From NCBI GenBank assembly GCA_965240325.2, contig OZ251225.1, positions 1 to 64,000 on the forward strand: DNA of 64,000 nt, written 5' to 3'. The translations under genes were made by a program, and so were the position numbers. Below are positions 16,901 to 56,357 of this stretch, one piece after another. The DNA comes from Rebecca billardiae RCC1528. Its lineage: Eukaryota; Protista; Haptophyta. Each line of letters starts with the position of its first letter. The stretch's first letter is position 1. The notes under the pieces were generated by a model that did not search any database, was not told the origin of the DNA, and saw only the letters and a program-made list of their open reading frames with translations.

Positions 16901-16971
16901 GCTCCAGGTCGGATCAGCTCCGGCACCGGCACGCGCCGTCGGAGAGCGGCGGCGGCCGCCCGGCGCGGTAG
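10958..16971 (+). CDS. Single-pass receptor: signal peptide, IPT/TIG, Bmp/PnrA-type periplasmic-binding domain, Cys-rich repeat, TM, HET/TIR-like domain (about 1665 aa, 10 exons)
   Basis: Exons 10958-11784, 11929-12166, 12255-12542, 12644-12876, 12961-14071, 14223-14357, 14475-15153, 15244-15314, 15402-15977, 16132-16971 join in frame (4998 nt); intron 3 is GC-AG. Bmp motifs: DLGWT, GADLVVGTTFG, YEHFYLAGVLAG, VGFVVGFP..NVNAFALG, WLGAWSD, AQHTD. HET/TIR-like motifs: FITHQWL..PD, VWVDYLCVPQ, SLAYY, YLRRMWCRAE. Confidence 0.8.
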
Positions 16972-17809
16972 CGGCGCTGGCCAGGATTTAGAGGATATTG
17001 AGGATAGGGCTGGAGGCTTCGGCCGCGCCAGCCTGATCACCCGCCGCCCGCTATTGTAAATAAGCGGAATTCATGCTTACAAAGTGACAAACCTATCGTC
17101 CGATCGACCGCTGGGCGCTGCACCCACTCGCCAGTCACCCTGGCTGCCCCGCTCCACGTCAAGGACCGAGACTCGCCCCCGGGCGACGACTTGGACGACG
17201 AGGAGCTGCCGCAGCAGCGGACGAAGCGCACCCTGGACGACGCCGCAGCGCCAGCCGCCGCCAGCCAGCCAGCTGGCTCGGGCGGCAGGCGCGTACGCGA
17301 CCGCTCGGCGGAGCACGGGGCAGGCTCGACCAGCTGCTACCAGCGGCTGAGACTGCCAGCTGACATCCGGACCTGCACCATCGCCCTCGCTCGGGGCACA
17401 GCAGGGCCATGCGAGCCGCGCAGCGCAGGTGGATCGCGCTCCAGCAGCTCAAGGCCGCGCTCAAGCTTTACGATCGCGGTGCAGGCTATGCTCTGCCACC
17501 AACGCCGACTTCGTGTCGACGATCGGGCACTGCCGCCAACAAATCAGGAGACCCGCGTCGTCCTACCTGTGTCGTGAAATCATGGAATGAGTAATGGAGT
17601 AATCGGCAATAGTAATCGACCCTCTACTTGATCGATCCTGATGAATACCTCGACAATAGCAAGGTATTTGAGTCGCCAACTCAGCGGGTACGGTATGTTT
17701 GAGCTGGTATTTGAAGGCGATTGTGATTCCAATCAATGTGGAGAATCTCCTGTCATACTCATCGCTTCGGCGAATCGGCGCGGGAGGAGCTCAGTACTGC
17801 GCCCGCGCC

Positions 17810-26800: not shown

Positions 26801-29800
26801 ATGCCGCTGCGCGCCGCGCTCACGCCGAGCGCCGCGCGCGTGGGCGGCCCCGACGCGGTGCGGCTGGACGCCTCCGCCTCCGCCAACCCGAACGAGGCGG
26901 CGGGCGGCGGGCTCGCGTTCGCGTGGGCTGTGGCGCGCGCGGCAGACGGCGCGCCCGTCGAGCTCGACCTGCCCAACGCCACCTCGCCCACGCTGCTGCT
27001 GCCGCCGGGCGCGCTGCCGCCGGGCGCGGCGTATCTCGTGCGCGTGCTCGTGTCCGCGCCCGGCGCGCCCGCGCTCGCGCCCGCGGCGGCGGAGGCGATT
27101 GTCGAGGTGGCGGCGGCCCCGGCGCCGCTGCCAGCGCTGCGCCTCGTGCCGCTCGCCGCGCGCAAGGCTGCGCCCACGTGGCAGCGCAGCAGCGGCCGCC
27201 TCGTCCTCCGCGCCACCATCGACGCCGGCGCGGACGCCGAGCTCGCCGACGGCGCAGAGGCGGAGGCGGCGCACGACTTTGCGTGGCGCGCGTGGCTCGT
27301 GGGCGCGGGCGGCGCGCGTGCGCCCGCGCCGATCGACCTGGCCGACAGCGTCGGCGTCACGACGACGGGCGCCGTGCAGCCCGCGCTCGCCTTCCGCAGC
27401 GGCGCGCTCAGCGCGGGCGCGACCTACGCGTTTGAGGTGCGCGCGACGCGGCGCGCGGACGGCGCGGCCGGCGGCGCGGCGTTCGCGGAGCTGGTCGTGG
27501 TGGTCAACCGGCCGCCGCACGGCGGGGCGCTGGCGGTCTCGCCGGCGCACGGCGTCGCCGCGCTCACGCTGTTTGCGCTGCGCGCGATCAGCTGGACGGA
27601 CGACGACGCGGACGACCTGCCGCTGAGCTACGCCTTCTCGCACGCGGCTGCGGACGAGGGCGCGGCCGCGGCGCTCGGCGCGGCGCAGCGCTCGGAGCAC
27701 GCGCTCGCGCTGCTGCCCGCGGGCAACCGCACGCTGTACGTGCGCGTGGCGGACGCGCTGGGCGCGAGCGCGCGCGCGGCGACGTCCGTGCGCGTGTACT
27801 CGCTCCGCGCCGACGCCGCCGCCGCAGCTGACGCCGCCGTGCCCGGCTCGGGCGGCGCGGTGGCGGACGCGGCCGTGAGCGCGGCGGTGGCGCGCGCACA
27901 GCTCGCGCTCGCCGCGGGCGACACGACTCGCTCGCTGCAGCTCGCCGGCGCGATCGCTGCCGAGCTGGGCGGCCCCGTGCCTGCCAACGCGTCGCTGGAT
28001 GCCGAGGTCGCAACCTCGATCTCGCTGCTCGAGCTCACGGCGGGCGCGGCGGGCGCGGGCGCCCTCGACGAGGAGGCATCGCGCGCGCACACGGCCGCGG
28101 CGCTGCGCGCGGTGCTGAGCGCGGCGCCGACTGAGGCGCTCGCGGCGGGCGAGGTGCAGCTGAGCGCGCTGGCGCAGGCCGCGGCCATCGGCGCGGCGGC
28201 GGCGGAGACGGGCGTGGGCGCGGCCGAGGGCGCCGCGCTCTTCGACGCGATGGACGCGGCGCTCAGCGCGCCCGCAGACGCGCTCACACGCGCGCAGGCG
28301 GCCGCGGTGGGCGCGGCCGCGGCCACCGCCGCGCACAGCCTTGCTCGCTCGCTGCTGGTCGGGGCACTGCCCGGCGAGCAGGCGGTCACGGCGGTGGGCG
28401 CGGCGCTCAACGTGTCCGCCGCGCGGCTCGCGCCGTCCGCGCTGCTCAACGCCAGCCTCGCCGCCGCGGGCGGCGCGGGCGCGCTGCGCGTGCCGCCGAG
28501 CGCGCTCGCCGGCGTCGACGCGTCGGCGCTGGGCGGCTCGGGCGTGGACGTGCTGCTGTGGAGCGTGGGCAGAGCGGGCCTGCGCGCGCCAGCGGCGGAC
28601 GCGGCGCTGAACGGCTCGGCGGCCACGCCCACCGCGACGAGCGTCTTCTCGGTCACGCTCGCCTCCGCGGCCAGCGGCTCGGCGCTGGCCATCTCGGGGC
28701 TGGCCGAGCCGCTGCTGCTCGGCATCCCGCCGCTGCCGCCGGCCGCGGCGGGCGCTCCGAACGGCTCGGTGGCGGCGGCGGGCGCGGTGACGGAGTGCCG
28801 CTGGTGGGACGTGGCACGTGGCGCGTGGGTGGCGGACGGGTGCACGACGCTGCCGGCCGACGGCTCCCCGCTCCTCTGGTGCGCGTGCGACCACCTCACC
28901 GAGTTTGCCGGCGTGGCGCTCGACGTGCCCGACTCGGCGGCGGACGCGCTCGACGACGCCAAGGCGTTCAGGCTCGAGCCGCTCGGCGCGGACGACGTGG
29001 CGGGCGCGCTGCTCGCGCCCGCGGCCGAGCGCGACCCGACGCTGCACGCGCTGGTCGGCAGCCTCGCCGCGGCGTGCCTCGCGTCCGTGTGCGCGCTCGG
29101 CTGCCGCGACCGGCAGGCCGCGCGGCGCAAGGCCGCGCAGGTGGTCGTGGACGAGGGCGCGGAGGAGGAGCAGCCCGCGGGGCAGCGCGTCTTCCGGCGC
29201 GCGCTCAGCATGCACGGCGCGCGCGCACCCGGCGCGGCCGCCTCGGCCGGCGGCGATGCGGCGATCTCGCCCGCGCTCCTCGCCGCGCTCGCCGAGCAGC
29301 ACGCCGCGTGCGAGATCCAGCGGTACGTCCGCGGGCTGCTCGCGCGCAGGGCGGCGGTCGACGAGGCGGAGTCGCACGCGGCGAGCTCGCTGCCCGGCGG
29401 CGGCGGCGGCGGCGGTGGCAAGCGCTCGCGGCTCGCGGCGCTGTGGGCACCCGCGCGGCGGCTGAGCGGCGCGGACGCGCTCGGGCTCGCGCGCGCGCTC
29501 GCAGCGCGTGCGGGGTCGGAGCACACGCTGCTCGGCGCGCTGCTCGGCCGGCGCGAGCCCTTGCTCCTGCCCTCCGAGCTCGCCATCCTCTTCTGGGCGG
29601 CGGCTGCGCTCGGCCTCGTGCTCTCGTGCGCGCTCTACGACGACGCGCCCGAGGGCGCGCCCGTTGTGCTGATCCACGAGCTGCTCGCCGCGGCGACGAC
29701 CGCGCTGCTCAGCGCGCCGCTGCTCTTCGTCGTCAAGGCGCTGTTCGTGCGCAGGCCGCGGCAGGGCGCCGCGCAGAGGGTGCTCAGCCGCGCCGAGCGC

Positions 29801-33745: not shown

Positions 33746-36700
33746 TTACCGCGCGCGCGTCGGGTGTCGGTCCACCATGATGGCGTCGACGTGCCGCTTG
33801 AACGTCGCACCGTCCGTCGCCTTCGTCATGATGTCAGAGTGGTTGAGCGAGGTGTGTACCTTGACCACCTTCACCTTGCCACCCTCCTGCGCGTCACGCA
33901 CATAGTGATGCTTGATCTCGATGTGCTTCGAGCGCTTGTGGTGCACAGGATTCTCCACGAGGTCGATAGCCCCCTTGTTGTCCTCTCGCACCTCCGTCGC
34001 GGCCCGCGGCGGCTGCCGCATGGACTCGAGTATGCTCCGCAAGTAGCTCACCTCGCGGCAGCAATCGCTCAGCGCGACGTACTCCGCCTCCGTCGAGCTC
34101 AGCGAGACTGTACCTTGCAGCCCGCTGTGCCACGACACCGGCGCCCCATTGTAGAACACAATGTATCCACCCGTCGACCTGCCCTTGGTCTCCACCGGAT
34201 TGCTTGCCCAATCGGAGTCAGCGAAAGCAAGTAGGTCGGGGTGCTCGGAATCTGTCGCAAACTTGAACAAGATTCCCAATCGCGGGCATCCACGTAAGTA
34301 GCGCAGCACGCGCTTCGCACTTACCAGATCCACCGCCCGCGGACATGACATGCGTCGCGTCAGCATGTTCACCGCGTGCGCGATGTCCGGCCGCGCCGTG
34401 ACCATCGCAAACATGAGACATCCCACCATCGCCTGGTAGTTCTCAATCTCCGCGCGCTGCAGCAACGCCTCATCGTCGTCGCTCAGCTGCGTCCGCGCCG
34501 CCGGCTCCGGCGTGCGCGCCGGCGTGCTCGCGTTCAAACCGAACCGCTGAAGCACGCTCTCGACGTACGGCCCCAGATGCATCAGGATGCCGTCGTCATG
34601 AACTTCAAACACGGCGCCCAGGAACTTATCGAGCCGCTCACTCAGCTTGATCTCGTAATGCTCCTTCAGGTCAGCCGCCAGCTTCTCCACCGCGCGCGCG
34701 TCGCGCGTCAGGTTGAGAAACAGCAAGTCGTCGACAAAGCCGCCCGCGATGATGAACTCGCCCGGCGCCGACTCCTTGACGTAGATGCACGGCGCACTCG
34801 GACACTCCGAGAAGCCGCGCGCGAGCAGCTGGGTGCGGTGCGTGCGATGCCACGCGCGCCCAGACTGGCGTAGGCCCGGATACGCCTTCAGGCTCCGGCC
34901 CACGACTTTGTGCCCCGGCGGCGCCTGCGTGCTCGGCACGTAGCCCGGCGGGAATGAGAAGAGAGGCCGCTCATCCGGCTTCAACTCCGAGTTGAGGTAC
35001 GCGTCCTTGACGTCGCCCTTCGACAGTATGCCCAGCGCCGCAACCGACGCTGCACCCAAGTCGACTCTCGCGCCCGCCTGCTGAGCGGCGATCGCCACGA
35101 GTAGTCGCACTTGTTCCGGCCGGATCGTCGGAGCAAAGACCTCCTGAAAGTCGATCCCCGGCCGCTGTAGGTTCCCCAGTAGCACCGACCGCGCCTTGAA
35201 GCGCGTCACCTCGCCCTCCGGGTTCGACTTCACGTCAAAGACCCACTGGCTCGGCAACACCCGCGTGCCCTCCGGAACCACCACCTCCTCCGAGGTGCCG
35301 AGCAACTTGTGACCTTCCAAGTGCTCGAGCATGGCGCCCTGCCACTGGGGCGCCTCCGCCGACCGCATCGCCTCGCGATAGTTCGTCGGCACCTTCACGT
35401 TGATCTTCTGGAACACCGACGCGGCGCTGACGACGGCAGTAAGCAGCTGCGGCCGTCGGCGCGACGTCCGATCCCTGCGAAGCGGATCGTGTCCCATATC
35501 CAGGCCGGGCGGCGGCGCGTCCTCGATCACGCCGTCGTCACCGTCTGCGCCGCGCGGCGGCCCGCCAGCATCTGCTGCGGCCCCGCGCCGTGATTCCGTC
35601 GGCGGTATCTGATCCTGCCGACCCGGCTGCGTCATCGACGCGCCTGCCCCGCCACGCCCGCCCTGCGGCGTCGGCGTCGACGGCTGTGCGCCCGCGCTGC
35701 TGCACCCGCGTTGTCCCGCGTCCACGCTGCTGCGCCCGCGCCCCGACGTTGACGCATCTGCGTCGTCGTCGTACCCGACGTCGAACTCTGTCGCGTCGTC
35801 ATTCCCGGCGTCGGCTGGCGTCTCGCCGCCATCGCCGTCCTCGTCCTCACCGTCGGCGTCACCGCCGACTGGACGATGTCCGCCGCTTACCGCGGCGCCG
35901 TCACCATCACCCACGTACGCGCCACCGTCAGGTGCGCCCAGCGACGAGTGCCCCCCCTCGACCAGGTCGGTCTCGTCGATGCGTACGTCACGTGAGTGAA
36001 CGAGACGTCCGTCGTCTAAACGACATACGTACCCGAGTACGTAGCGCCATGTACCGCGCCACTGCACGCCGTGCCCACCCCAGAGATAGACACGTCCGGG
36101 TAGTGCGCGCTGCCTCAGCTGCCCCAATGCATTGCGCCGTGCGCCCAGCATCAGCACGCGGCAGCGCGCTCCAAACGCCACGTGATGCTTCCACGTCGGG
36201 CGTTTGCCAAAGAACAGCTCATCCGGCGTGAGCCACTCAATGTCGCCATCGTCACGAATGATACCACGTGACGCCAGTCGATTGCGCGACGCGCATGCGT
36301 GCCACGCCGCGTAGTGCCAATCGACCCTCGAGACTCCACGCGCAACGACCGTGGCGCGCAGTCTCGACTTCAGCGTGCGGATAGCGCGTTCCGCCACGCC
36401 ATTCGAGCTCGGCGAGTCGGGCGCCGACGTGACCGTCGACGAGAACCCAAGCTTCGCCAGCTCACCCTCGACGTACGTACTCAGCAGCGTCGAGCCACCG
36501 TCGGTGTGAATATGGCGTCGCGCCATAGTACACCCCGACGCCAGGACCCAATGCGACATGTGCATGGCCCCTGTACCAAGCAACTGCGCGTACCAGCGGA
36601 ATGCCCGACCAACCTCGGCGTCATCCAAGCTGCGTAGCGCGTACACTTGCCATCGACGTGAATGCCCATCGATGAATATGATCCCATGAGGATACCCTCC

Positions 36701-37030
36701 ACGCGCGCCATCGGCCCCAACTGGTAAGTCGATGCGTGCCATGGAGAAGATGTCGACGTGCGTCACCTGCCCAGGGTAGTGCGCCGTCGGCATTGCGTCC
36801 GCGAACGGCCGCCGCGTCATGCCCGCCGCCGACTGCTCGTCGAGCGACTCACGCCGCGCGTTCGCCCCCTCCATCCCCTCGGCCACGCGTCGCGTGCGCT
36901 CGAGTAGACGTTGGTCATTGGTGCCCGTTCGAACCGACCAAGTGCGCAACCACGCCGGATCAGCGCCTCGCGCCGCCTCCGTAGTGTTTGTGGTTCGCAC
37001 CTGCGCGGGTTCCGGGCTTAGGCGTTTGGG
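33746..37030 (-). CDS. pol: Copia Pol ORF2: integrase, reverse transcriptase, RNase H
   Basis: IN: HVD, HTDGG, NGVAERAIRTL. RT: WVFDVK..FKARSV, DVKDAYL, GLRQSGRAW, FVDDLL. RH: FADSDWA, STEAEY, EDNKGAI, KHIEIKHHYVR, SDIMTK. Lies in the -1 frame relative to ORF1. Confidence 0.93.
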   Translation of the reverse strand, partial: PKRLSPEPAQVRTTNTTEAARGADPAWLRTWSVRTGTNDQRLLERTRRVAEGMEGANARRESLDEQSAAGMTRRPFADAMPTAHYPGQVTHVDIFSMARIDLPVGADGARGGYPHGIIFIDGHSRRWQVYALRSLDDAEVGRAFRWYAQLLGTGAMHMSHWVLASGCTMARRHIHTDGGSTLLSTYVEGELAKLGFSSTVTSAPDSPSSNGVAERAIRTLKSRLRATVVARGVSRVDWHYAAWHACASRNRLASRGIIRDDGDIEWLTPDELFFGKRPTWKHHVAFGARCRVLMLGARRNALGQLRQRALPGRVYLWGGHGVQWRGTWRYVLGYVCRLDDGRLVHSRDVRIDETDLVEGGHSSLGAPDGGAYVGDGDGAAVSGGHRPVGGDADGEDEDGDGGETPADAGNDDATEFDVGYDDDADASTSGRGRSSVDAGQRGCSSAGAQPSTPTPQGGRGGAGASMTQPGRQDQIPPTESRRGAAADAGGPPRGADGDDGVIEDAPPPGLDMGHDPLRRDRTSRRRPQLLTAVVSAASVFQKINVKVPTNYREAMRSAEAPQWQGAMLEHLEGHKLLGTSEEVVVPEGTRVLPSQWVFDVKSNPEGEVTRFKARSVLLGNLQRPGIDFQEVFAPTIRPEQVRLLVAIAAQQAGARVDLGAASVAALGILSKGDVKDAYLNSELKPDERPLFSFPPGYVPSTQAPPGHKVVGRSLKAYPGLRQSGRAWHRTHRTQLLARGFSECPSAPCIYVKESAPGEFIIAGGFVDDLLFLNLTRDARAVEKLAADLKEHYEIKLSERLDKFLGAVFEVHDDGILMHLGPYVESVLQRFGLNASTPARTPEPAARTQLSDDDEALLQRAEIENYQAMVGCLMFAMVTARPDIAHAVNMLTRRMSCPRAVDLVSAKRVLRYLRGCPRLGILFKFATDSEHPDLLAFADSDWASNPVETKGRSTGGYIVFYNGAPVSWHSGLQGTVSLSSTEAEYVALSDCCREVSYLRSILESMRQPPRAATEVREDNKGAIDLVENPVHHKRSKHIEIKHHYVRDAQEGGKVKVVKVHTSLNHSDIMTKATDGATFKRHVDAIMVDRHPTRAR

Positions 37031-39639
37031 GGCGGCGCAGCGCCAACGCGCCCCCGCCCCGCGCCCACGCGCCGCACTGGCGCCCTGCGCCGTGCGCGCT
37101 GCTCCGCCGGCGCATCGCCGACGTCCGGCCCCACCTGGCGCCGTACAATCTCGGCGCGCAGCGTGGAATCGCGCGGTAGCTGCACGACGCCGCCTCCCAG
37201 CGCCGTAAAGTCCGCAGTGTTGCCGCGCTGCGAGTAGTGGAACTCGATGCCTGCGTCCGCGCAGTGCTCGACCGACAGCAGCGGCGCCGTGACGCGCCGC
37301 GACGCCCACGCCTCGATCTCGAGCGTGAGGACCTTGTCGCTGTCGTCGTCCGCCGCAAGCTTGACCACCAGGGTCCCGCGGTGAGTGACCCGCTCCCGCG
37401 CACCGTTCCCCCACTCGATCTGACATGCGCCGTCCACCGGGGTAAGATTCGTCAAATCCTCGGCCATGGCGATGTTCTTCCGTGCGCCAGTGTCAAACAC
37501 CAACGCCCGCGTGTTGTCCTCCGGCTGCGCCACGCGTGCCTCGGCCGCCCGCGCCGCGACGATCTCGATGTCCTCGTCGCGCTGCGCCCTGCCGCCGATA
37601 GCCGCGCCAATAGGCGCCAAGCCGAGTCCGGCGCCGGTGCCGCCGCCGTCTCCGGCGTCTGCGCCACCGTCGCCACCAACGGCGCCGTCGGGCTCGTCAC
37701 CCTGCTCGGGAGCGAACGCGACCTGCGTGCGGACCGTGCCGCCGCCGTTGCCATTACCGACCACGGCGCGGGTGCTCCCCCCGCTGCCGCCGCCGCCACC
37801 GCTGCCGCCGCTCCGCAGTGAGCCACGGCTGCGATCCGACCGCGTCGACGCCGCGTCATCGCCAGCGTTCGAGTCGCGATCAGCCTGCGTCACCTGCGGG
37901 CAGTAACGCTTGATATGCCCCACGGCGCCGCACTTGTAGCAGCGCGGCCCGTGCGCGTCGTCGGAGTCGCCGTGGCCTCCGCGGCCGGTGCCGCGGCCAG
38001 CACCGCCGCCACCGCCGCCGCCGCGACCTCCGCCGCCGCCACCACGGCCAGCCGGCGACGTCGCGTCGCCGCCGCCGCCACCCGCCGACGCCGCCGCCGC
38101 CTGCGCCAGGCGGAGCCCGTCGATTGGGTGCGCGCGGGTAGCGCCGCCGCCTCCTGGCGTGCGGCCACCCGCCCCTGGGCGCCCAGGGCCGCCGCGGTCA
38201 ACCCGCTTGCCCTTGGAGAAGTCCCAGTCCTCGAACTTGCCGTTGAGCTCGTGCACGAGCTCCTGCACGTCGAAGTTCGTCACGGTCCTGTAGTCCTTCG
38301 ACTCGTACCGCGTCCGCATCTCGATGCCCGCGCCCACCGGCGGAATGAACTCGATGAGCCGCGCAAGCATCTCCGCCGCTGGCGCTGCGTCACTCAGCTC
38401 CTGCAGCAGCACGTGGTTGTGCTGTAGCACCTGGAAGAGCTCGAGTGCGCCGACGCCGTCCTTGCCGCAGTCCGGCAGGACCGTCCGATGCCAGCGTGCC
38501 CGCACCGACATGTACTTCCGCATGTCGTCGGGCTTGCGCATGCGCAGGATCGTCTTCCACAGGTACAGAAACTCGCGCCCCGGCGTAAGTGCGCCCCGGC
38601 GCGCGCGCTCCTCCTGCACCTCCGGCTGCGTCTCCATGAGGCGGTTGATGTGCTGCCACGCAGCCTCCGTCACCCACGACCGCAGCTCGGTGCGTAAGAA
38701 AGCCGTCCCTTTCTCGTACTGCGCCCCGGCGTACTTGGCGGGGTCCGCCTCGTCGCCGTCCGGCGCTGCCTCCAACACGCTCTGTCGGAGCTTTATGTCC
38801 AGCATGGCGTGCTCGCTCGCCTGCCGCTCATACATCTGTTCCTCGGTCTCGCGCTCGCGGCGGTAGAGCTCGCGCGCGCGCGGATCGAGCGTCACGGCAG
38901 CGCCGCCCGCGGGCGCCGCGCCACCGATCCCGCCGGCGCCGCCCGTAGGCGCTGCGCCGACGCTGGCGCCGCCCGCAGGCGTCGCGCCGTCAGTCCCAGC
39001 CGGCGCACCTGCCGCGCCGCCTGTGCCCACACCCGGACCGGGTGTACCGGCCGCCGGACCCGGAAAAATTCCGGATCCGCCGCCCGCCGCCGGACCTGAA
39101 CCCGGTCCGGTCGCCGTCGGGCCGCCCGGAGTGGCTAAACCACTCCCCGCGCCCGCCGAGGCAGCCTGCGCGTAGCTTGGCGCCTGCCTCGCCCCCGCCG
39201 CCGCCGCCGCGCGTTCCGCCGCGGCCCGGCGCTCGGCGTGCTCGCGGCGCTCGTGCTCGTGGCGATGGTCGAGCAGCCGCTGCTGCAGCGCGTAGTTCTC
39301 ACGCGCCAGGTCCATCCGCTCGGCACTGACCTTGATCATCTTCGCCGCGGATGGGTTGAATGTCTCCCACGTCGAGTTGTACTCCTCGAGCGTGTTGATG
39401 CGGTGCTCCGCGTTCGGGCCGTGCGTCACGATGATGCCGTTCAGTGCGGACATCGTAGCACCTTGCCCCGCCGGAAGCGCCGCCAGCCTGCTCGCCGATT
39501 GCGCGAGCCAGCGCTGCTGATTGCCCTTGTCGTTGAGCATCCCCACGTCGACCGAGCCGTGCATCCGGCCGCTCGTGCCCATCGGCGCGATCGATGAGAA
39601 AGCGCCGCGCGTACGATCCCTCCCGATCGCTGCATGCAT
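37018..39639 (-). CDS. gag: Copia Gag-protease ORF1
   Basis: Zinc knuckle CYKCGAVGHIKRYC and aspartic protease LVFDTGA followed by GNG...G. The true start may be a downstream Met. Confidence 0.9.
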   Translation of the reverse strand: MHAAIGRDRTRGAFSSIAPMGTSGRMHGSVDVGMLNDKGNQQRWLAQSASRLAALPAGQGATMSALNGIIVTHGPNAEHRINTLEEYNSTWETFNPSAAKMIKVSAERMDLARENYALQQRLLDHRHEHERREHAERRAAAERAAAAAGARQAPSYAQAASAGAGSGLATPGGPTATGPGSGPAAGGGSGIFPGPAAGTPGPGVGTGGAAGAPAGTDGATPAGGASVGAAPTGGAGGIGGAAPAGGAAVTLDPRARELYRRERETEEQMYERQASEHAMLDIKLRQSVLEAAPDGDEADPAKYAGAQYEKGTAFLRTELRSWVTEAAWQHINRLMETQPEVQEERARRGALTPGREFLYLWKTILRMRKPDDMRKYMSVRARWHRTVLPDCGKDGVGALELFQVLQHNHVLLQELSDAAPAAEMLARLIEFIPPVGAGIEMRTRYESKDYRTVTNFDVQELVHELNGKFEDWDFSKGKRVDRGGPGRPGAGGRTPGGGGATRAHPIDGLRLAQAAAASAGGGGGDATSPAGRGGGGGGRGGGGGGGAGRGTGRGGHGDSDDAHGPRCYKCGAVGHIKRYCPQVTQADRDSNAGDDAASTRSDRSRGSLRSGGSGGGGGSGGSTRAVVGNGNGGGTVRTQVAFAPEQGDEPDGAVGGDGGADAGDGGGTGAGLGLAPIGAAIGGRAQRDEDIEIVAARAAEARVAQPEDNTRALVFDTGARKNIAMAEDLTNLTPVDGACQIEWGNGARERVTHRGTLVVKLAADDDSDKVLTLEIEAWASRRVTAPLLSVEHCADAGIEFHYSQRGNTADFTALGGGVVQLPRDSTLRAEIVRRQVGPDVGDAPAEQRARRRAPVRRVGAGRGRVGAAPPPNA

Positions 39640-41236: not shown

Positions 41237-42622
41237 CTAGCCGACAGCCCGAGTACGCTTCGTCACTGCAGCTGCTGGCGCGGCCGCGCCGCCGCCGCCC
41301 CCGCCGCCCGCCTCGTCGCGCGGCACGAGCAGCTCGTACGCGGCGAGGCCCGCCGCCGCGCACGCCGCGCCCGCGTAGAAGTGCGCCGTGGGCGCGCCGT
41401 GGCGCAGCCCCCACGCGAAGAGGCGCGCGGCGCCCTTGTACGCGAGCAGCCGGTCGAGCGTGCTCATCGCCTCGAGCGCGCCCAGCGTCGCGCCGCCGTC
41501 CGACTCGGCGGCCTCGCGCGCGACGAGGCCGGTGAGCGCGGGGAGGCAGAAGGTGGCGAGCGAGGCGCACACCACCGCCGCGGCGAACGCGGCCCCCGAG
41601 CGCGCCGCGCCCATCCCGACCATCGCGAGCGCGAACGCGCCCATCCCCGCGCGCACGAGGTTGCGCTCGGCGCGCAGCGCGGGGAGGAGCAGCCGCGGGC
41701 CCAGCCCGTTCGACGCGGCGAGCGCGAGGCCGGCGGCGGCCTGCAGGCCGACGGCGGCGGCGGGGGACCAGCCGAACGCGTAGTCCGTGTAGTTGTACAG
41801 CGTCGTCTGCAGCGCGTTCAGCCCGAGCCACAGCAGCAGGTACGCGAGCGCGGCGCCGCGCGTGCGCCGGCCGCCCCACCAGAAGAGCCGCGCGGCCGCG
41901 CCCAGCGGGTGCGCCGAGCGCCAGTCGACGCGCGGCGCGCGCCGGGCGGGCGGGAGGGTCTCGGGCGCGCACGTCGCGAGCACCACGCCCGCCAGCGCCG
42001 CGACCCCCGCCGCGATCGCGAACGCGAGCCGCGGGCTCGCCGCGGTCGCGAGCGCGCCGCCCGCGCCGCCGCCGATCAGGAACGCCGCGCCGAGCGACGC
42101 GCCCTGCAGCACGCCGAGGCGCGCGGAGAGCGCGCGGCGCGAGGAGATGTCGCGCACGGCGGACTGGCAGATGGGCAGCATGCACGACGTCACGCCGTCG
42201 AGCGCGCGCCCCGCGAGCAGCAGCGGCACCGAGCGCGAGGCGACGACCGTCGACCAGCCCGCGGCGATGCCCGCGCACGCGAGCACCTGCAGCGGGCGGC
42301 GGCCGACGACGTCGGAGACGGCGCCCCAGACGGGGTCGAAGAAGAACGTCATCAGCTGGTCCACCGACTCGAACGTGCCCTTGAGCTCGACGCCCGCCGG
42401 CGTGACCGCCGTCGAGCCGTCCGCGTTGGCGATCGCGTTGGCAAAGCGCGGCATCGCCGGCGTCGTGAGCGAGGCGGAGGTGAAGTACGCCCAGCACGCG
42501 AAGATGGGCCAGCCGATGGAGGGCGTCCCCCGGGGCGGCGCGTCGTCGGCGCCCTCCGACGCGCCGCGCCGCGCCGCCGAGCCGCCCTCCGCCGGCGCCG
42601 CGGCGAGCAGCGCTTCGTCCAT
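41237..42622 (-). CDS. Major facilitator superfamily transporter, TetA/DHA1-like (461 aa)
   Basis: MFS motif A GAVSDVVGRRP, motif B LAGRALDG and about 12 hydrophobic segments. ATG at 42622 (MDEALL); single exon. Confidence 0.9.
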   Translation of the reverse strand: MDEALLAAAPAEGGSAARRGASEGADDAPPRGTPSIGWPIFACWAYFTSASLTTPAMPRFANAIANADGSTAVTPAGVELKGTFESVDQLMTFFFDPVWGAVSDVVGRRPLQVLACAGIAAGWSTVVASRSVPLLLAGRALDGVTSCMLPICQSAVRDISSRRALSARLGVLQGASLGAAFLIGGGAGGALATAASPRLAFAIAAGVAALAGVVLATCAPETLPPARRAPRVDWRSAHPLGAAARLFWWGGRRTRGAALAYLLLWLGLNALQTTLYNYTDYAFGWSPAAAVGLQAAAGLALAASNGLGPRLLLPALRAERNLVRAGMGAFALAMVGMGAARSGAAFAAAVVCASLATFCLPALTGLVAREAAESDGGATLGALEAMSTLDRLLAYKGAARLFAWGLRHGAPTAHFYAGAACAAAGLAAYELLVPRDEAGGGGGGGAAAPAAAVTKRTRAVG

Positions 42623-42676
42623 GCTTGGCCCTCGGCCGTCCGTCCAGTCGGACTCCGGAACCTCCGGTCCCATACG

Positions 42677-43287
42677 GTATGGAGCGCTCGTTGGAACTTG
42701 AGCGCGGATGGAACTTGACACCGCATTTCCCAGCGAAGTGCCCCATCTCGGCGGGGCTGGCACGGTCGGCACACGCTCCTGAGCGCTCGCTTTGCGGTGC
42801 GGCAGGCCTTGGGTAGCCCAGACAGACATGCCGCGACCGAATTACCGGGCCATGCGCGCACCACACCCGCGCTACATGGCCTACGCGCTGGACGACTGAG
42901 AGGCAACGCCGAACCACTGCATTCCACTGCCCCGCATGCACCCCGAGTCACCTTCAGAGGGCGTCGACGAGCGCAGAGCGCGTGCGTGGGAGTTCGACCA
43001 ACTCGTGTACCTTCTTGCAAGCACCAGCGGCGAGGTCGCAAGCCGAACCTTGACCAGCCGTGGAACTTGAGCTGGTCGGCAGCAAAACCACCGTTCAACC
43101 CGGATCAAGTTAGCAGCGTGCGAGGAGGAGGCGCGGTGCGCGTCCGCGGCTGGCGAGAGGCGTCCGGGCCGTGCCGTTCTCGGCCGCGCCCGCGCGCTTC
43201 CCGCCGCCGCGGGCCCCGTGTACGCCCGTCGTCGCCCTCGCCGCGCGGGCGCCAAACCGGCGTCAAGTTCCAACGAGCGCTCCATAC
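42677..43287. mobile_element. MITE-like element, 611 bp, with 25-bp perfect inverted repeats
   Basis: GTATGGAGCGCTCGTTGGAACTTGA (42677-42701) and TCAAGTTCCAACGAGCGCTCCATAC (43263-43287), with internal TGGAACTTGA copies near 42709 and 43061. No clean TSD. Confidence 0.6.
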
Positions 43288-43656: not shown

Positions 43657-46600
43657 ATGGCGTCGCTGCGCGCGAGGGTGCAGAAGCCCTCGTTCATCAT
43701 CGTCACCGACCCCGGTCCCGACCCCGACGACGTCAAATGTTCGCGCGCGCGCGCACGAGCGCGCGCGCGCGCGCGCGCGCCCGCGGGCTCACGCACGCCC
43801 GGCGCGCGCGCACGCGCGCGCGCAGCGCTGCTGATCGCGGCGACGCTGCACAAGCACGGCAAGCTGAACCTGCGTGCCGTGATCGTCAACGGCGGCCTGC
43901 AGGCGCGCGAGCGCGCCATCCTCGCGCGCTGCCTGATCGACCACCTGAACGAGCCGTCCATCCCGGTCGGCATCGGCTCGTCGGGCAAGGAGCACGTGCC
44001 CGCGCCGCACGAGTACCAGCTGGACGGGTACGACAAGGTGGACCCGGCGCGGCTGGAGGACGGCCCCGAGCTCATGCTCCGCGCGCTCCGCGAGGCGCCG
44101 CGCGGCTCGCTCACCGTCGTGCTCATCTCGTCGCTGCGCGACTTTGCGGACGCGTGCCTGGCCGAGCCCGAGCTCGTGATGGCCAAGGTGAACCACGTCG
44201 CCGTGCAGGGCGGGCTGGAGAAGGCGGAGGAGGGCAAGTTTGGGTGGAAGCCGGACACGAGTGTCAACAACGGTGCGCCCGCGCGCCCGCGCGCCGCGCG
44301 CCGGCCAGCCGCGCGCGCGCGCCGCGCGCGCGCGCCGCGCGCGCGCGCGCTCACGCGCCGCCGGCCCGCGGCCTGCCCGCGGCCGCGCGCGCGCGCGCCG
44401 CAGGCTTCGACCCCGAGGGCGCGCGCATCGTGTACGACTTCTGCTTCGAGCGCGGGCTGCGCATGTCGATCACCTCGCGCTTCGCCGTGCCGATGCTCCC
44501 CATGCAGCTCGCCAAGTCCTTCGCCGAGCGCGTGGACTCGCCGGTGATGCGCTACCTGGCCAACGCGCAGTTCCTCGGGCTCGAGGGGCTGTGGAACAAG
44601 CTGTGCGGCGGCAAGCTGCCCGCGCGCTGCTCGAAGCAGTGGTACTTCGAGACGTTCTGCGGCGTGGACAAGCAGGAGTTCGAGGACAAGGGCTACGACG
44701 CGCTCGCCTCCGACGCGCCCATCGTCTCGTACCTCAACGGGTACGTGAAGCCGTACGACGTGGTCGCGCTGATGACCGCGCTGCCGTGGCTCTCGCCCAT
44801 CTTCGAGGGGCGCGAGGCGAGCGTCGTGCACGAGGTGAAGGGCGTGAAGCACCGGCTCTTCCTCCGCGTGGAGGACGCGGTGGAGGTGCGCCACGTGCTC
44901 GAGCTGCTGCGCGACACGTACCACGAGGTCGTCGCCATCTCGAAGGGGCTGCACAAGTCGAACTCGAGCGCGGTGCTGCGCCGCTCCGAGCTCGGCTCGG
45001 TCGGCGCGGGCGGCTCGGCCGCGAGCGGCCTCGCGGCCGACAAGACCTCGGCGGTGTCGTCGCGCTCGTCGTCGGTCACGTCGGACCGCAACGCGCCGCT
45101 CGACTCGCCCCACTCGCCCGGCTCCTCCGTCGGCGGCTCCGGCCGCGTGCTCGGCCTCACCATCCGCGAGGAGGGCGAGCGCACGGGCGGCGCCGGCCGG
45201 TCTGCGCAGACGTCGCGGCTCAAGAAGGCGGCGCTCTCCAACGACGAGACGAAGGAGTGGCTCGAGGACGTGCTGGCGCGCACGCGCTGGCGCCAGGCGA
45301 TCGTGGCGAAGTGGGCGGTCGCGCTCGGCCTCGCCTTCTGCCTCGCGCTCATCATCGTCTACGTCGCGGACACCGCCGTCGCCGCCGCGGCCAACTCTGC
45401 GCCGCGCGTCGACTACCTCTACCTGGCGGACGAGGCGTACGCGCTGCGCGTCAACCTCTACGCCGTCTGCGGGCTGGTGGCGGTGCTCACCGGCGTGCTC
45501 GCGCTGTGGCCGAGCCACACGCAGCTCTGGCGCATCCGCGCCGTCGCGTTCGGCATGGGCGCGTTCGGCGCCGTCGTCACCGGCGCGCGCATGATGGTCT
45601 TCCTCTCGATCGTCGACCCGTCGCGCGAGTGGGTGATGCCGGCCGAGCCGAGCGCCGAGCGGCCCGCCGAGTACTGGCGCGACCACTGGGCGCCGCGCAC
45701 GGCGCTGCGGCTGGTGCAGTGGGGCGGCGCGCTGGGCACGCTGCTGCTCCTCCTCGTGCCGCTCTGGCGCAAGCCCGCCGCGCTCATCCGCGCGATCTGG
45801 CGCGGCCTCGCGCTGTTCGGGCTGCTGGAGGGCGGGTTTGCGCTGCACGTGGTCGCGATGGCCGTCTTCAGCCCGGCGGGCGCGGCCGGCCTCGCCGTGC
45901 TCGGCGTGGCCACGAGCCTGCTCGGCGCGGCGATGCTCGCGCCCACGGCGCACGGGCGCGTGCAGTCCGCCCTCGCGCGCGCCGTCGCCTCCGGCTCCGC
46001 GCCCGACGCCTTCGTCGCGCCGCTCCTCGGGCTGGGCACGCGCGAGGGCGAGATCGACCCGATCGACCTCGTGCCCGAGGCGGCGCGCAGCTTTGCGCCC
46101 GTGCCGCTCACCGAGACGGCCTTCGCCGTGCTCGAGGGGCGCGACGCGAGCGTGCTGCGCGAGACGTCGCGCGACTCGTTCAACCCGCACGTCCAAGTCG
46201 CGCGCCCCTTCTGGCACCGCCGCCGCCCCGCCGCGCCGCCGCTCGCCGAGCTCGACGACTCGGCCGCGCCGAGCGAGGGCGGCAGCGGGCGGCGCACCAT
46301 CCTCGGGCTGCAGGGCGCGGGGCAGGGCATCGCCGCCGCGCGCCGCGCGGTCGCGCGCGTCAACTCCGAGCCGATCCGCGCGCGCCGCGCGGACGCGTAC
46401 GTCGTGCACTCGCCCGCCGACCCCGCGCGCGCGCGCGCCAAGGCGCTGCGCGCGTGGGCGTCCGACTTCGAGAAGCGCGTGGGCCGCGCGCCCGTCGTGT
46501 GGCACGACATGCTCTCGGCAGACCCGTCGCTCGCGCCGCACGAGCTGCTCGCGCACACGCCGTGCTACCTCGCCTTCTCGTCCAAGCTGCTCATCCTCGC

Positions 46601-47259
46601 CGGGCCCACCGTCGTCGACCGCCTGTGCGCGCGCGCCGCGCGCCTTTCGCGCCGCGCCGCGCCCGCCTCTCCCGCCGGGCCGCTCACCGCGCGCGCCTGC
46701 CCCCGCGCCCGCGCCGCGCCCGCGCGCGTCCGTGCGCGCTGCCGCCCCTGCTGCCCCTGCCGCCCCTGCCGCCCGCAGCTGGTGCGTGGCCGAGCTCTAC
46801 GTGTGGCGCGCGATGGGCGGCCAGCTCGAGCACGTGACCGTCGTGCCGGTGGGCCAGAACGAGGCCGAGCGCACGCAGGCCCTCTCCGCCTTCGACGCGT
46901 TCCACGTGCGCTACTCCGCGCCGGGCGGCGACGACGAGGCCGTGGCGCGGCTCAAGCACGCCGTGCAGCTCGGCGGCATCTCGGTCGTGAACCGCGCGGT
47001 GCGCGAGGCGCTGCCGCTCGTCAAGGAGGCGGTCGCCGCGTACGCGGCGGAGGAGCAGAAGCCGCCCGAGCCGGCCGAGACGCAGGAGGTCGTCGCGATC
47101 GACATCAACAAGCTGAACAACGGCCGCGGCTCCTCCGGCGGCGGCGGCAAGGCGCCCGCCGCCGCCGAGCCGCGCCCCGGCAGCGCCAAGAAGCCCAAGG
47201 CCGCGACCGTGGCGCCCGACCAGCCGCAGGCCGGCGCCGCCGCGTCGTCCTCCAGCTGA
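43657..47259 (+). CDS. Nucleoside-hydrolase (IU-NH)-like domain, 6 TM, TIR/HET-like domain fusion (about 1076 aa, 4 exons)
   Basis: Exons 43657-43738, 43826-44272, 44404-46624, 46779-47259 join in frame (3231 nt). IU-NH-like motifs: IIVTDPGPDPDD, IPVGIG, VAVQGG, NNGFDPEGA, PYDVVA. TIR-like motifs: DAYVVHS, VWHD, LAFSSKLLILAGPT..RLWCVAEL. Confidence 0.8.
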
Positions 47260-54704: not shown

Positions 54705-55204
54705 TCACCCCGCGCCTCCGCTCGGCGGTGCGCCCTGGGCGGCGGGGGGCGCCTCCCACTCGGGCTTGGGGTAGATGCCCTGCTGCGAGCAGACGAACGC
54801 GGCGGCGGAGGGCGGCTGCATGTGCCCCGACTCGCCCATCGCGCGCCGCTTGTACACCCCCTTCCACGTCTGGAAGTGGAAGAAGGCGGCGGCGTCGTAC
54901 CGGCGGTCGGGCGTGCGCAGCCGGCGGCGCCGCCGCCACATCTTGCCGTCGAGCCAGAGCAGGTCGTCGTCCGAGCCGACGCCGCCGTTCGTCAGGTTGG
55001 CGCACACGCGCCAGCGCTCGTCCACCCAGCGCGAGCAGTTCGAGTGCAGCGCGAGCGGGAGCAGCGGGCCCACGGGCTCGTACAGCCCGCGCAGCGCGAC
55101 CGAGTGCTCGCGCTCGGCGGCGGCGGCCGCGTCGTCGTCCGCGTCCGCGTCGGGGCCGAGCGCGCACGCGCCGCGCCGCGCCGGCCGCGGGAGCGCGCCC
55201 GGCT

Positions 55205-55235
<31 letters not shown>

Positions 55236-56357
55236 GCTGCCGCCCTCCGTGCCGTGCGCGGCGGGGCAGACGCGCACCTGCCCGTCGAGCACGGCGAGCT
55301 CGCCCTCCAGCCCGAAGTCCGCGAAGAACTTGTTGGCGATCTTGACGCGGATGCCGGGCGTGCCGTACACGGCCGCCGAGTAGCAGCCCTCGGCGCTGAT
55401 GAACCGCACGCGCGGCGGCGGCTTGCCCGACTTCTGCGCCTCCTCCGACATGCGCTTGTGCGCGGCCGCCTTGAAGGTGAGCTCGCGCAGCAGCCCCGCG
55501 CCGAGGTGCTCGCACCGCGCGAAGATCGTGTTGACGTGCGGCACGTTGCGGTGCGCGGTGTACTGGCCGCGCATGTAGAGCCGCTCGTGGTCGCCAAACG
55601 ACCACGTCACCACCTCGTACTGCGTCAGCTCGGCGCGCTCGATGAACGCGGGCAGGTCGCCGGCGACGATGTCGAGGTCGGTGTACGACCAGTGCGTGTA
55701 CCCGCGCAGCCACTCGGCGAAGACGACGCCGAGCGTCGGCTTGTACTCCGTGACGATGTACTTGTACGAGCGGAACGAGTACTCGAACGCCTTCACCAGC
55801 CGCGCCGTCTCGTGCGTCACGTTCAGCGCGCGCGCGAGCGAGACGCCAAACTGGTACGCGAGCCCGCCGGGGCCCATGTCGACGAAGCGCACGTTGGGCG
55901 GCACGAGCTCGGGCGGCACGCGGCCCAGCGACGCCGAGACGTTCGCCGCCTCGTGGAAGATGAGCCAGTCGACGAGGAAGGCCGAGCGGCGCGCGGAGAC
56001 GAGGAAGTAGGGGAACCACGGCGGGAAGTGCTCGCCCAGCCACGGGACGACCATCGCCAGGCGGAACTCGGGGTGCCGCGCGGGCGGCGGCCCCAGCTCG
56101 GTGGCAGCCACGCCCAGCGGCGGCGGCTCGGCGGCCGGTGCGGCCGCGTGACCGTCGCCCAGGGGCGCGCGCGCGCGAACGAGCGGCAGCGGCAGCAGCC
56201 GCCTCCGGCGCGCCGCGCCGCCGCCGCCGCCGCCGCCGCCCGAGCTCATCGACGGCCCGTCGCTCAGCGAGACCCATGGGAACCAGATGAGCGGCGAGAG
56301 AATGAAACCGAGCGTGAAGCAGAGGAGGGCGGGCAGGGCGCCGCGCGGGGCTCGCAT
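54705..56357 (-). CDS. Type II membrane putative glycosyltransferase (DXD motif; DUF6625-like), 550 aa
   Basis: N-terminal signal anchor; motifs PPWFPYFL, DWLIF, EYKPTLG..F..WL.GYTHWSYTDLDIVAG and FFHFQ.WK. Confidence 0.75.

What the first reader, a model, noticed from the sequence alone, without database searches (positions are those of the whole stretch)
43657..47259. Nucleoside hydrolase-6TM-TIR-like fusion protein
Seen: an IU-NH-like N-terminal domain with an altered Asp motif (DPGPDPDD), six hydrophobic helices and a TIR-like C-terminus retaining RLWCVAE but with degenerate HSP and WHD motifs. An even TM count would put both soluble domains on the same side. Known: IU-NH enzymes and TIR domains both cleave N-glycosidic bonds of ribosides. 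Inference: a membrane-anchored sensor/effector in which one domain makes or senses a nucleoside-type signal for the other, reminiscent of prokaryotic TIR-based defence.
Basis: partly seen in the sequence, partly recalled or inferred. Interest (0 to 1): 0.78.

Follow-up and report, generated by a model that had tools for sequence, protein, structure and literature searches.

The report
XopQ-like hydrolase, membrane block, TIR fusion
This GC-rich alga has an intact gene for one membrane protein that joins a TIR-type domain (the kind that makes NAD-derived immune signals) to an enzyme domain like bacterial XopQ, which a 2026 preprint reports destroys such a signal. I found this pairing described in no paper.

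Summary
Window 43657-47259 (+) is an intact four-exon gene with three GT-AG introns, encoding 1076 aa.

- **N-terminal domain:** it is not a classical IU nucleoside hydrolase. It belongs to the XopQ/HopQ1-like clan, with the DxxxDxDD motif and XopQ as best solved match. It keeps 10 of the 12 XopQ active-site and ADPR-contact positions I mapped.
- **Middle:** six hydrophobic helices form an orphan membrane module. Its topology is predicted N-in/C-in, so both soluble domains would face the cytosol.
- **C-terminal domain:** it has a TIR fold. An AF2 model of a relative reached pLDDT 95, and every top structural hit is a TIR domain (Z up to 10.7). This copy keeps the WCxxEL glutamate.
- **Fusion:** exon 3 alone encodes half of the hydrolase domain, all six helices and half of the TIR domain. 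The fusion is therefore in the DNA, and full-length relatives include transcriptome-derived proteins.
- **Distribution:** all named relatives come from Pavlovales algae (Diacronema lutheri, CCMP2436), as a multigene family.

A 2026 preprint shows XopQ cleaves the TIR product 2'cADPR. The likeliest reading is a membrane TIR signalling unit with a built-in signal breaker or sensor. No activity was tested, and no RNA run was listed.

The scan found paralogues of this family before on other pieces of this genome, with the same reading. This copy keeps the residues I checked in both domains.

The parts
43657..43738 (+). Exon 1 (27 codons plus the first base of a split Ser codon). It holds the start ATG and the DxxxDxDD motif.
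   Evidence: Read from the sequence; phase bookkeeping; a short, non-significant match to XopQ 29-43.
43708..43731 (+). DPGPDPDD: the non-canonical Ca2+-binding motif DxxxDxDD of the XopQ/HopQ1-like clan. It corresponds to XopQ D116, D120, D122 and D123.
   Evidence: motif definition in PMC11685791.
43739..43825 (+). Intron 1: GT..AG, 87 nt, 90% GC, with no in-frame stop.
   Evidence: The 29 RA-rich codons it would add are absent from XopQ and from all relatives.
43826..44272 (+). Exon 2: the central part of the XopQ-like hydrolase domain.
   Evidence: Pfam PF01156 E=4.7e-6; XopQ 48-197 at E=2e-4; tblastn matches of relatives end at 44271-44274.
44273..44403 (+). Intron 2: GT..AG, 131 nt, 95% GC.
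44404..46624 (+). Exon 3: 740 codons in one open frame. It encodes the C-terminal half of the hydrolase domain, a Ser-rich linker, six membrane helices, the juxtamembrane motif, a second linker and the N-terminal half of the TIR-like domain.
   Evidence: P0017 185-956 aligns to 44406-46625 at E=4.7e-91.
43687..44960 (+). XopQ/HopQ1-like nucleoside-hydrolase-fold domain, protein residues about 11-362, interrupted by introns 1 and 2.
45294..45950 (+). Six-helix membrane module (protein residues about 474-692), predicted N-in/C-in.
   Evidence: Hydropathy; AF2 model at pLDDT 83.8 with six long helices; loop charges; homologous in 86 of 155 collected relatives; no known fold match.
46008..46109 (+). 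Conserved cytosolic juxtamembrane motif after helix 6 (A..LAPLLGxG...P..L...A...F....L).
   Evidence: Conservation in alignment A5.
46392..46624 (+). TIR-like domain, first half (strand A to strand C; DAYVVHS ... VVWHD ... LLILAGP).
   Evidence: model of relative P0001.
46625..46778 (+). Intron 3: GT..AG, 154 nt, 89% GC. It splits the TIR-like domain just before helix C.
46779..47259 (+). Exon 4: the second half of the TIR-like domain (to about 47040), a low-complexity tail and the TGA stop.
46780..46797 (+). WCVAEL: the helix-C motif of TIR domains. The Glu codon is at 46792-46794 (protein residue 922).
   Evidence: The family profile aligns this stretch with CWCQYELY of the TLR15 TIR domain. 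Glu is kept in 47 of 65 relatives.

Best explanation
**What it is.** A real, intact pavlovophyte-type gene encoding a six-pass membrane protein. Its two soluble domains both face the cytosol.
- The N-terminal domain is of the XopQ/HopQ1 type. This is a nucleoside-hydrolase fold with the DxxxDxDD calcium site and an enlarged pocket that binds ADP-ribose in XopQ.
- The C-terminal domain is a TIR/HET-like domain that keeps the glutamate TIR enzymes use to cleave NAD+.

**Most likely mechanism.**
- The two domains are coupled through an NAD-derived nucleotide. On activation, probably by clustering of the membrane module, the TIR-like domain converts NAD+ into a cyclic ADP-ribose-type signal.
- The tethered XopQ-like domain binds that signal and hydrolyses it to ADP-ribose. 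It would act as a built-in terminator or noise filter, a maker and a breaker on one polypeptide.
- The membrane block serves mainly as anchor and coupling platform. Its conserved residues lie on the cytosolic loops and the juxtamembrane motif, not in a polar pore.

**Shown here.** Gene structure, architecture, both folds, residue conservation and family distribution.

**Inferred.** Both catalytic activities, the identity of the nucleotide, the direction of coupling and any role in antiviral or other defence.
For: - **Gene and fusion.** The four exons have GT-AG introns and third-position GC of 0.93-1.0. Relatives break at the exon ends and one spans the whole of exon 3. Transcriptome-derived relatives P0001 and P0009 carry all three modules in one ORF.
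- **XopQ type.** P0002:1-345 matches XopQ structures 4kl0/4p5f at E=7e-26 and 7jlu_B at 2e-24, against 6e-3 for classical hydrolases. The window pieces match XopQ collinearly.
- **Hydrolase residues.** I mapped XopQ numbering as 4kl0 chain index plus 81, checked against six named residues. With that map the window keeps D116, D120, D122, D123, N280, L345, W361, F366, Y398 and D399. So do 10 of the 11 relatives in which all twelve positions could be read.
- **XopQ activity.** XopQ cleaves 2'cADPR to ADPR with kcat/Km 1.4e7 and blocks TIR signalling (bioRxiv 10.64898/2026.06.15.732069).
- **TIR fold.** The AF2 model of P0001:965-1140 has pLDDT 95.4. The seven Foldseek hits at E<=1e-3 are all TIR domains, and TIR chains fill nearly the whole list. 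All 50 listed VIA hits are TIR domains, with Z 10.7, 10.4, 10.3 and 9.8 for RPPT, RUN1, RPP1 and SARM1.
- **Sequence bridges to TIR.** Relatives reach TIR_2 at 24.7-26.6 bits over profile positions 2-109 of 122. The family profile aligns the WCxxEL stretch with TLR15. The window keeps every family-consensus residue including the Glu.
- **Topology.** Six helices with positive short loops 2 and 4.
- **Membrane module conservation.** It sits on the cytosolic face.
Against: - No enzyme assay was done, and no RNA run was listed for this locus.
- The TIR model is of a relative that is 33-38% identical to the window's two pieces of the domain, not of this protein. The joined protein was not folded.
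- No Pfam TIR model reaches its cut-off for any member. This copy gives no Pfam hit at all in exons 3 and 4.
- Two XopQ residues differ across most of the algal family: Y279 to Val and Y311 to Pro. Y311 holds the alpha-phosphate of ADPR. The substrate may therefore not be 2'cADPR.
- About 28% of relatives have replaced the TIR glutamate. Catalysis by the TIR-like domain is therefore not essential for every family member.
- A BB-loop glycine typical of TIR enzymes is not evident.
- I could not check directly on coordinates that the Glu sits in a TIR-type active site.
Confidence: 0.5

Rival explanations
1. Sensor-effector reading. The XopQ-like domain acts mainly as the receptor for a nucleotide signal made by other TIR proteins. 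Ligand binding then switches on the protein's own TIR-like domain (NAD+ depletion or signal amplification) or perturbs the membrane through the six-helix block. This would resemble Thoeris ThsA-type effectors.
For: - The ADPR-contact residues for the base (L345, W361, F366) and the phosphate (Y398) are conserved.
- The alga has many six-helix-plus-TIR-like relatives without the hydrolase domain, which could be signal makers.
- Conserved cytosolic loops and a juxtamembrane motif suggest inter-domain coupling.
- XopQ closes a lid over bound ADPR (10.1101/2020.08.13.246413).
Against: - The full catalytic and Ca2+ set (D116, D120, D122, D123, N280, D399) is strictly kept in 13 of 14 relatives. That is more typical of a working enzyme than of a pure receptor.
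- Intramembrane polar residues are not conserved, which argues against a conserved pore.
Confidence: 0.25
2. No nucleotide link between the domains. The TIR/HET-like domain is a non-enzymatic oligomerisation or cell-death adaptor, as in animal TLR adaptors or as assumed for fungal HET. The hydrolase domain acts on an unrelated substrate, such as a nucleoside or a cytokinin-like riboside.
For: - Pfam TIR models are never reached. Relatives also give weak HET hits (best 4e-4).
- The biochemistry of HET is listed as not determined (PMC12881547).
- 18 of 65 relatives lack the Glu.
- Y279 and Y311 of XopQ are replaced.
Against: - The two domains are kept together, with active-site-type residues in both, across many paralogues and at least two species.
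- The hydrolase domain is far closer to XopQ than to nucleoside-cleaving enzymes.
- XopQ proteins were inactive on nucleosides.
Confidence: 0.2
3. Gene-model artefact. The hydrolase part and the TIR part are separate genes or transcripts, or the locus is a pseudogene.
For: No RNA run was listed for this stretch. The splice sites are inferred from sequence and homology only.
Against: - Exon 3 is one 740-codon open frame that contains parts of all three modules.
- There is no in-frame stop, third-position GC is 0.93-1.0, and all consensus residues are kept.
- Transcriptome-derived relatives are full-length fusions.
Confidence: 0.03

Closest known systems
XopQ / HopQ1, type III effectors of Xanthomonas and Pseudomonas syringae (PDB 4KL0, 4P5F, 7JLU)
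   Same: - Nucleoside-hydrolase fold with the DxxxDxDD calcium motif.
- The best solved match of the family (E=7e-26 for relative P0002).
- Conserved D116, D120, D122, D123, N280, L345, W361, F366, Y398 and D399.
   Different: - XopQ is a soluble secreted bacterial protein with no membrane or TIR part.
- Here the domain is the cytosolic N-terminus of a eukaryotic membrane protein.
- Y279 is Val and Y311 is Pro.
- Activity on 2'cADPR was not tested.
Algal clade of HopQ1-like proteins (Piechocki et al. 2018, PMC6019455)
   Same: The same clan and motif. That paper already lists heterokont and haptophyte members as an algal clade.
   Different: That study trimmed sequences to the hydrolase domain. 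The words 'transmembrane' and 'TIR' do not occur in its text, so the architecture found here is not described there.
Signal-producing TIR domains (plant RUN1, RPP1, ROQ1, RPS4; SARM1; bacterial AbTir, ThsB, SPARTA)
   Same: The same fold, with Z 8.2-10.7 over 109-143 aligned residues. The same W-C-x-x-E-L spacing on helix C as in TLR and plant TIR domains.
   Different: - Sequence identity is only 7-16%.
- No Pfam TIR model is reached.
- No evident BB-loop glycine.
- Extra C-terminal helices.
- Attached to a six-helix membrane block rather than to an NB-ARC/LRR, ARM/SAM or Argonaute partner.
Fungal HET domain (PF06985), a TIR-related cell-death domain
   Same: Relatives give weak HET hits to profile positions 4-64, the W-x-D-x-x-C region. 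The ESM Atlas names one haptophyte cluster 'heterokaryon incompatibility domain-containing'.
   Different: The hits are below the cut-off and cover only the first part of HET. This copy gives none. HET is described as fungal and is usually soluble or fused to an NLR.
Multi-pass membrane TIR proteins of Gephyrocapsa huxleyi expressed during virus infection (PMC12489294)
   Same: Haptophyte proteins with several N-terminal membrane helices, an intracellular TIR domain and a conserved Glu.
   Different: That paper reports no additional domains in those genes. No hydrolase domain is mentioned.
Bifunctional make-and-break signalling enzymes (GGDEF-EAL proteins for c-di-GMP; RelA/SpoT for ppGpp). 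The comparison is from my own knowledge.
   Same: One polypeptide, often membrane-anchored, carries both the synthase and the hydrolase of a nucleotide messenger.
   Different: The folds and messengers are unrelated. The analogy is functional only and is untested here.

Membership tests
XopQ/HopQ1-like protein clan of the nucleoside hydrolase superfamily | Homology to the nucleoside-hydrolase fold (PF01156) | tested here: met
   The window pieces score E=3e-6 at 27 bits, below the cut-off of 34.2 because the domain is split by introns. Relative P0002 scores 42.7 bits, above the cut-off. 10 of 53 relatives hit, best 5.7e-15.
XopQ/HopQ1-like protein clan of the nucleoside hydrolase superfamily | Non-canonical calcium motif DxxxDxDD instead of DxDxxxDD | tested here: met
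   DPGPDPDD at 43708-43731. Motif definition in PMC11685791.
XopQ/HopQ1-like protein clan of the nucleoside hydrolase superfamily | Closer to XopQ than to classical IU/CU/IAG hydrolases | tested here: met
   E=7e-26 to XopQ against 6e-3 to 1ezr for relative P0002. The window pieces hit only XopQ chains.
XopQ/HopQ1-like protein clan of the nucleoside hydrolase superfamily | Conservation of XopQ residues that contact ADPR and Ca2+ | tested here: inconclusive
   10 of 12 mapped positions are kept. Y279 is Val and Y311 is Pro in this copy and in most of the family.
XopQ/HopQ1-like protein clan of the nucleoside hydrolase superfamily | Hydrolysis of 2'cADPR to ADPR | not testable with these tools
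   This needs purified protein and LC-MS.
Classical inosine-uridine nucleoside hydrolase (IU-NH) | DxDxxxDD motif and a catalytic His before the Ca-binding Asp | tested here: not met
   The motif is DxxxDxDD. The residue before D399 is Tyr (KPYDV), as in XopQ. The His criterion is from my own knowledge of IU-NH.
TIR domain superfamily | Flavodoxin-like alpha/beta fold in the TIR order of strands and helices | tested here: met
   The model of relative P0001:965-1140 has pLDDT 95.4. All 50 listed VIA hits are TIR domains, with Z up to 10.7. Foldseek is TIR-dominated, 4.8e-4 for RUN1. The window pieces align to the modelled relatives, with every consensus residue kept. The window's own joined domain was not folded.
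TIR domain superfamily | Match to a curated TIR sequence model at its cut-off | tested here: not met
   No Pfam hit for exons 3 and 4 or for P0001, P0002 and P0005. The best relatives reach TIR_2 at 26.6 bits against a cut-off of 28.
TIR domain superfamily | Conserved glutamate on helix C (the catalytic Glu of TIR NADases) | tested here: met
   WCVAEL at 46780-46797. The profile aligns it with CWCQYELY of TLR15. The Glu lies in model helix 85-96, directly after strand C. Structural superposition at residue level was not available.
TIR domain superfamily | NAD+ cleavage or cyclase activity | not testable with these tools
   This needs expression and product analysis.
HET domain (PF06985) | Match to the HET model over its length | tested here: inconclusive
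   10 of 65 relatives give weak partial hits (best 4e-4, profile positions 4-64 of 146). This copy gives none.

The most novel reading that the evidence does not exclude
Haptophyte algae run an endogenous TIR signalling pathway that uses a 2'cADPR-like messenger. This family is its self-regulating membrane unit, with the signal maker (TIR) and a XopQ-type signal hydrolase on one protein. XopQ-type enzymes would then be native regulators of eukaryotic TIR signalling, not only pathogen weapons. The bacterial effectors and these host domains would share that ancestral job.
Probability: 0.3. Interest if true: 0.85.

Novelty: new variant of a known kind. Interest (0 to 1): 0.7.

Why it matters
XopQ's activity was reported only in 2026: it cleaves the plant and bacterial TIR messenger 2'cADPR. 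A natural protein that ties a XopQ-type domain to a TIR-type domain is independent, evolutionary evidence that the two activities belong to one pathway. It also suggests that eukaryotic hosts use such hydrolases to shape their own TIR signals.

The family gives a directly testable entry into nucleotide-based immunity in haptophytes. These are ecologically important algae that are attacked by giant viruses. This copy is a good candidate for assays because it keeps the XopQ-type and TIR-type residues I checked in both domains.

Tried and rejected
- **Pfam on the window's exons 3 and 4, and on the C-terminal parts of P0001, P0002 and P0005.** No TIR hit. The fold had to be shown by structure prediction and by bridging through relatives.
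- **Classical IU-NH membership.** Rejected on the motif and on the E-value gap.
- **Separate genes or a pseudogene.** Rejected.
- **Known fold for the six-helix module.** Foldseek against the PDB gave nothing below E=0.37. The wide VIA search gave a best Z of 9.5, to a designed helical protein, which is within helical-bundle noise. The ESM Atlas returned only the family's own haptophyte cluster. I therefore do not call it a channel or a transporter. Intramembrane charged residues are not conserved.
- **RNA evidence.** No run was listed for the locus, so read laying could not be used.
- **Viral relatives.** The hydrolase alignment found no relative in IMG/VR contigs. The TIR alignment was too variable for that tool. 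Neither result shows absence.
- **Other copies.** A second copy in this window was looked for and not found.
- **Literature.** I found no paper describing the fusion. One search failed on a character rule and was re-sent.
Full report
**Gene model.**
- The window is very GC-rich, 70-75% around the locus, and the finding changes frame three times.
- Reading the DNA gives four exons on the + strand: 43657-43738, 43826-44272, 44404-46624 and 46779-47259.
- They are separated by GT..AG introns of 87, 131 and 154 nt that are 89-95% GC.
- The exon phases fit. The CDS is 3231 nt, giving 1076 aa and a TGA stop. Third-position GC is 0.93-1.0 in every exon.
- tblastn matches of seven relatives against the window break at or within a few bases of the exon ends. 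P0017 residues 185-956 cover the whole of exon 3 at E=4.7e-91. There is no second copy in the window.
Every search on the window used single exons by reference, and whole-domain work used intact relatives.

**The fusion is real.**
- Exon 3 is one 740-codon open frame. It encodes the C-terminal half of the hydrolase domain, a Ser-rich linker, six hydrophobic helices, a second linker and the N-terminal half of the TIR-like domain.
- No pair of separate transcripts could therefore yield two intact halves.
- Relatives from transcriptomes (P0001 from MMETSP1466, P0009 from MMETSP) and from the genomes of Diacronema lutheri and Pavlovales sp. CCMP2436 have the same three modules in one protein.
- No RNA run was listed for the locus, so the splice sites rest on sequence and homology.

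**N-terminal domain.**
- Pfam gives only a sub-threshold IU_nuc_hydro match on the window pieces (E=3e-6). Relative P0002 passes the cut-off.
- Against solved structures, P0002:1-345 matches Xanthomonas XopQ at E=7e-26 (4kl0, 4p5f) and 2e-24 (7jlu_B). Classical nucleoside hydrolases reach only 6e-3.
- The window's three pieces hit XopQ collinearly at positions 29-43, 48-197 and 206-331. The exon 1 match is short and not significant on its own.
Piechocki et al. 2018 already noted that this clan has an algal clade, but they analysed the hydrolase domain only (PMC6019455).
- I mapped XopQ numbering as 4kl0 chain index plus 81. Y279, Y311, L345, W361, F366 and Y398 all fell on the named residue types.
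- With that map the window keeps D116, D120, D122, D123, N280, L345, W361, F366, Y398 and D399. Y279 is Val and Y311 is Pro.
- The same residues are seen in 10 of the 11 relatives in which all twelve positions could be read. The exception, P0028, has lost several of them.

**Why the XopQ match matters.**
- A June 2026 preprint shows that XopQ proteins cleave the ribose-ribose bond of 2'cADPR, the main product of many plant TIR domains, to give ADPR. The reported kcat/Km is 1.4e7 M-1 s-1. XopQ does not cut nucleosides, 3'cADPR, cADPR or pRib-AMP.
- The same preprint shows that XopQ thereby shuts down TIR immunity in plants and in type VI Thoeris (bioRxiv 10.64898/2026.06.15.732069).
- That paper does not mention eukaryotic homologues, and none of the passages I read describes a XopQ domain fusion.

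**C-terminal domain.**
- The window's exon 3 tail and exon 4 align to the contiguous domain of relatives across the intron 3 junction.
- A three-sequence profile of this domain finds 1834 representative proteins at E<=1e-3 and 1078 at E<=1e-10. The domain is nearly always at the C-terminus.
- An AlphaFold2 model of P0001:965-1140, built with a 65-sequence alignment, has pLDDT 95.4.
- The seven Foldseek hits at E<=1e-3 are all TIR domains, and TIR chains fill nearly the whole list (RUN1 at 4.8e-4).
- In the second look, all 50 listed chains are TIR domains. Z is 10.7 for RPPT, 10.4 for RUN1, 10.3 for RPP1, 10.0 for MyD88 and 9.8 for SARM1.
- By sequence, 11 of 65 relatives give weak TIR_2 hits and 10 give weak HET hits. 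The best TIR_2 hits cover profile positions 2-109 of 122 at 24.7-26.6 bits, against a cut-off of 28.
- The family profile aligns LLvLaGPtlldrLWCvvELY with VLFVLSPSFVNSCWCQYELY of the TLR15 TIR domain.
- UniRef and the ESM Atlas automatically label some relatives as TIR or HET proteins.
- The window copy keeps every family-consensus residue, including W-C-x-x-E (Glu 922, codon 46792-46794). The Glu is kept in 47 of 65 relatives.
- I could not superpose coordinates residue by residue. The placement of the Glu in the active site therefore rests on motif spacing and its position on helix C.

**Membrane module.**
- Hydropathy gives six segments.
- An AF2 model of window:45243-46130, built with 48 relatives, has pLDDT 83.8 and six long helices.
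- Short loops 2 and 4 carry +2 and +3 charge with no acidic residue, while loops 1 and 3 are acidic or neutral. This fits an N-in/C-in topology with both soluble domains cytosolic. The N-terminus has no signal-like segment.
- The module is homologous in 86 of 155 collected relatives, including shorter proteins that lack the hydrolase domain.
- It has no convincing match in the PDB. In the ESM Atlas it matches only its own haptophyte cluster of 282 members.
- Conservation lies on the cytosolic side, at P90, R97/R99, W175, L181, W186 and the post-helix-6 motif. Charged residues inside the helices are not conserved.
- I therefore read the module as an anchor and coupling platform rather than a conserved pore. 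This is an inference.

**Distribution.**
- All named relatives of the hydrolase-bearing form come from Diacronema lutheri (at least 14 gene models) and Pavlovales sp. CCMP2436 (at least 6). The rest come from unnamed transcriptome and metagenome sources.
- The best hits are 53-60% identical over the conserved hydrolase part. This places the window's organism near the Pavlovales, but it is not one of those two genomes.

**Earlier notes in this scan.** The scan flagged paralogues of this family on other pieces of the same genome. Follow-up agents reached the same maker-and-breaker reading and noted that some copies lack the TIR glutamate. I reached the XopQ and TIR assignments before opening those notes. 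They agree with my reading but are not independent evidence.

**Mechanism.**
- Best reading, about 0.5: the two cytosolic domains are coupled through an NAD-derived nucleotide. The TIR-like domain makes it and the XopQ-like domain hydrolyses it.
- Main rival, about 0.25: the XopQ-like domain is chiefly a sensor that controls the TIR-like domain or the membrane block.
- Second rival, about 0.2: there is no nucleotide link, and the TIR/HET-like domain is an adaptor.
- The strict retention of the calcium and catalytic set favours a working hydrolase. The replaced Y279 and Y311 warn that the substrate may be a different TIR product.

**Literature.** I found no paper that describes this architecture. 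The nearest is a report of multi-pass membrane TIR proteins in Gephyrocapsa huxleyi that are induced during virus infection, stated to have no further domains (PMC12489294).

**Verdict.** The gene is a new architectural variant built from known domain kinds. This copy is a well-preserved member of a pavlovophyte multigene family.

Noticed in passing
window 43739-43825, 44273-44403, 46625-46778: The three introns are 89-95% GC and largely alternating GC/GCGC tracts. Intron 1 is 87 nt, a multiple of three, with no in-frame stop. If retained, it would insert 29 Arg/Ala-rich residues right after the calcium motif.
   Followed up: partly
window 41237-42829 (-): A major facilitator superfamily transporter ORF (PF07690, E=2.7e-23) lies head-to-head with this gene, about 830 bases upstream.
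   Followed up: partly
window 33746-39639 (-): Two long overlapping ORFs with RVT_2 reverse transcriptase and a zinc knuckle, consistent with a copia-type retroelement.
   Followed up: no
window 54705-56357 (-): An ORF of 550 aa with a DUF6625 match (E=6.9e-17).
   Followed up: no
window 12000-32000: A stretch of 80-84% GC with strong negative GC skew at 20-26 kb. It overlaps another finding of the scan.
   Followed up: no
relatives P0028, P0018, P0033, P0068, P0069, P0076, P0077 (not in the window): Some family members look like pseudo-enzymes. P0028 has lost several hydrolase Asp/Asn residues. About 28% of TIR-like domains have replaced the helix-C Glu.
   Followed up: partly
relative P0016 (1110 aa, not in the window): Here the TIR-like domain lies at residues 306-461, not at the C-terminus, and the profile matched two stretches. 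The architecture may differ.
   Followed up: no
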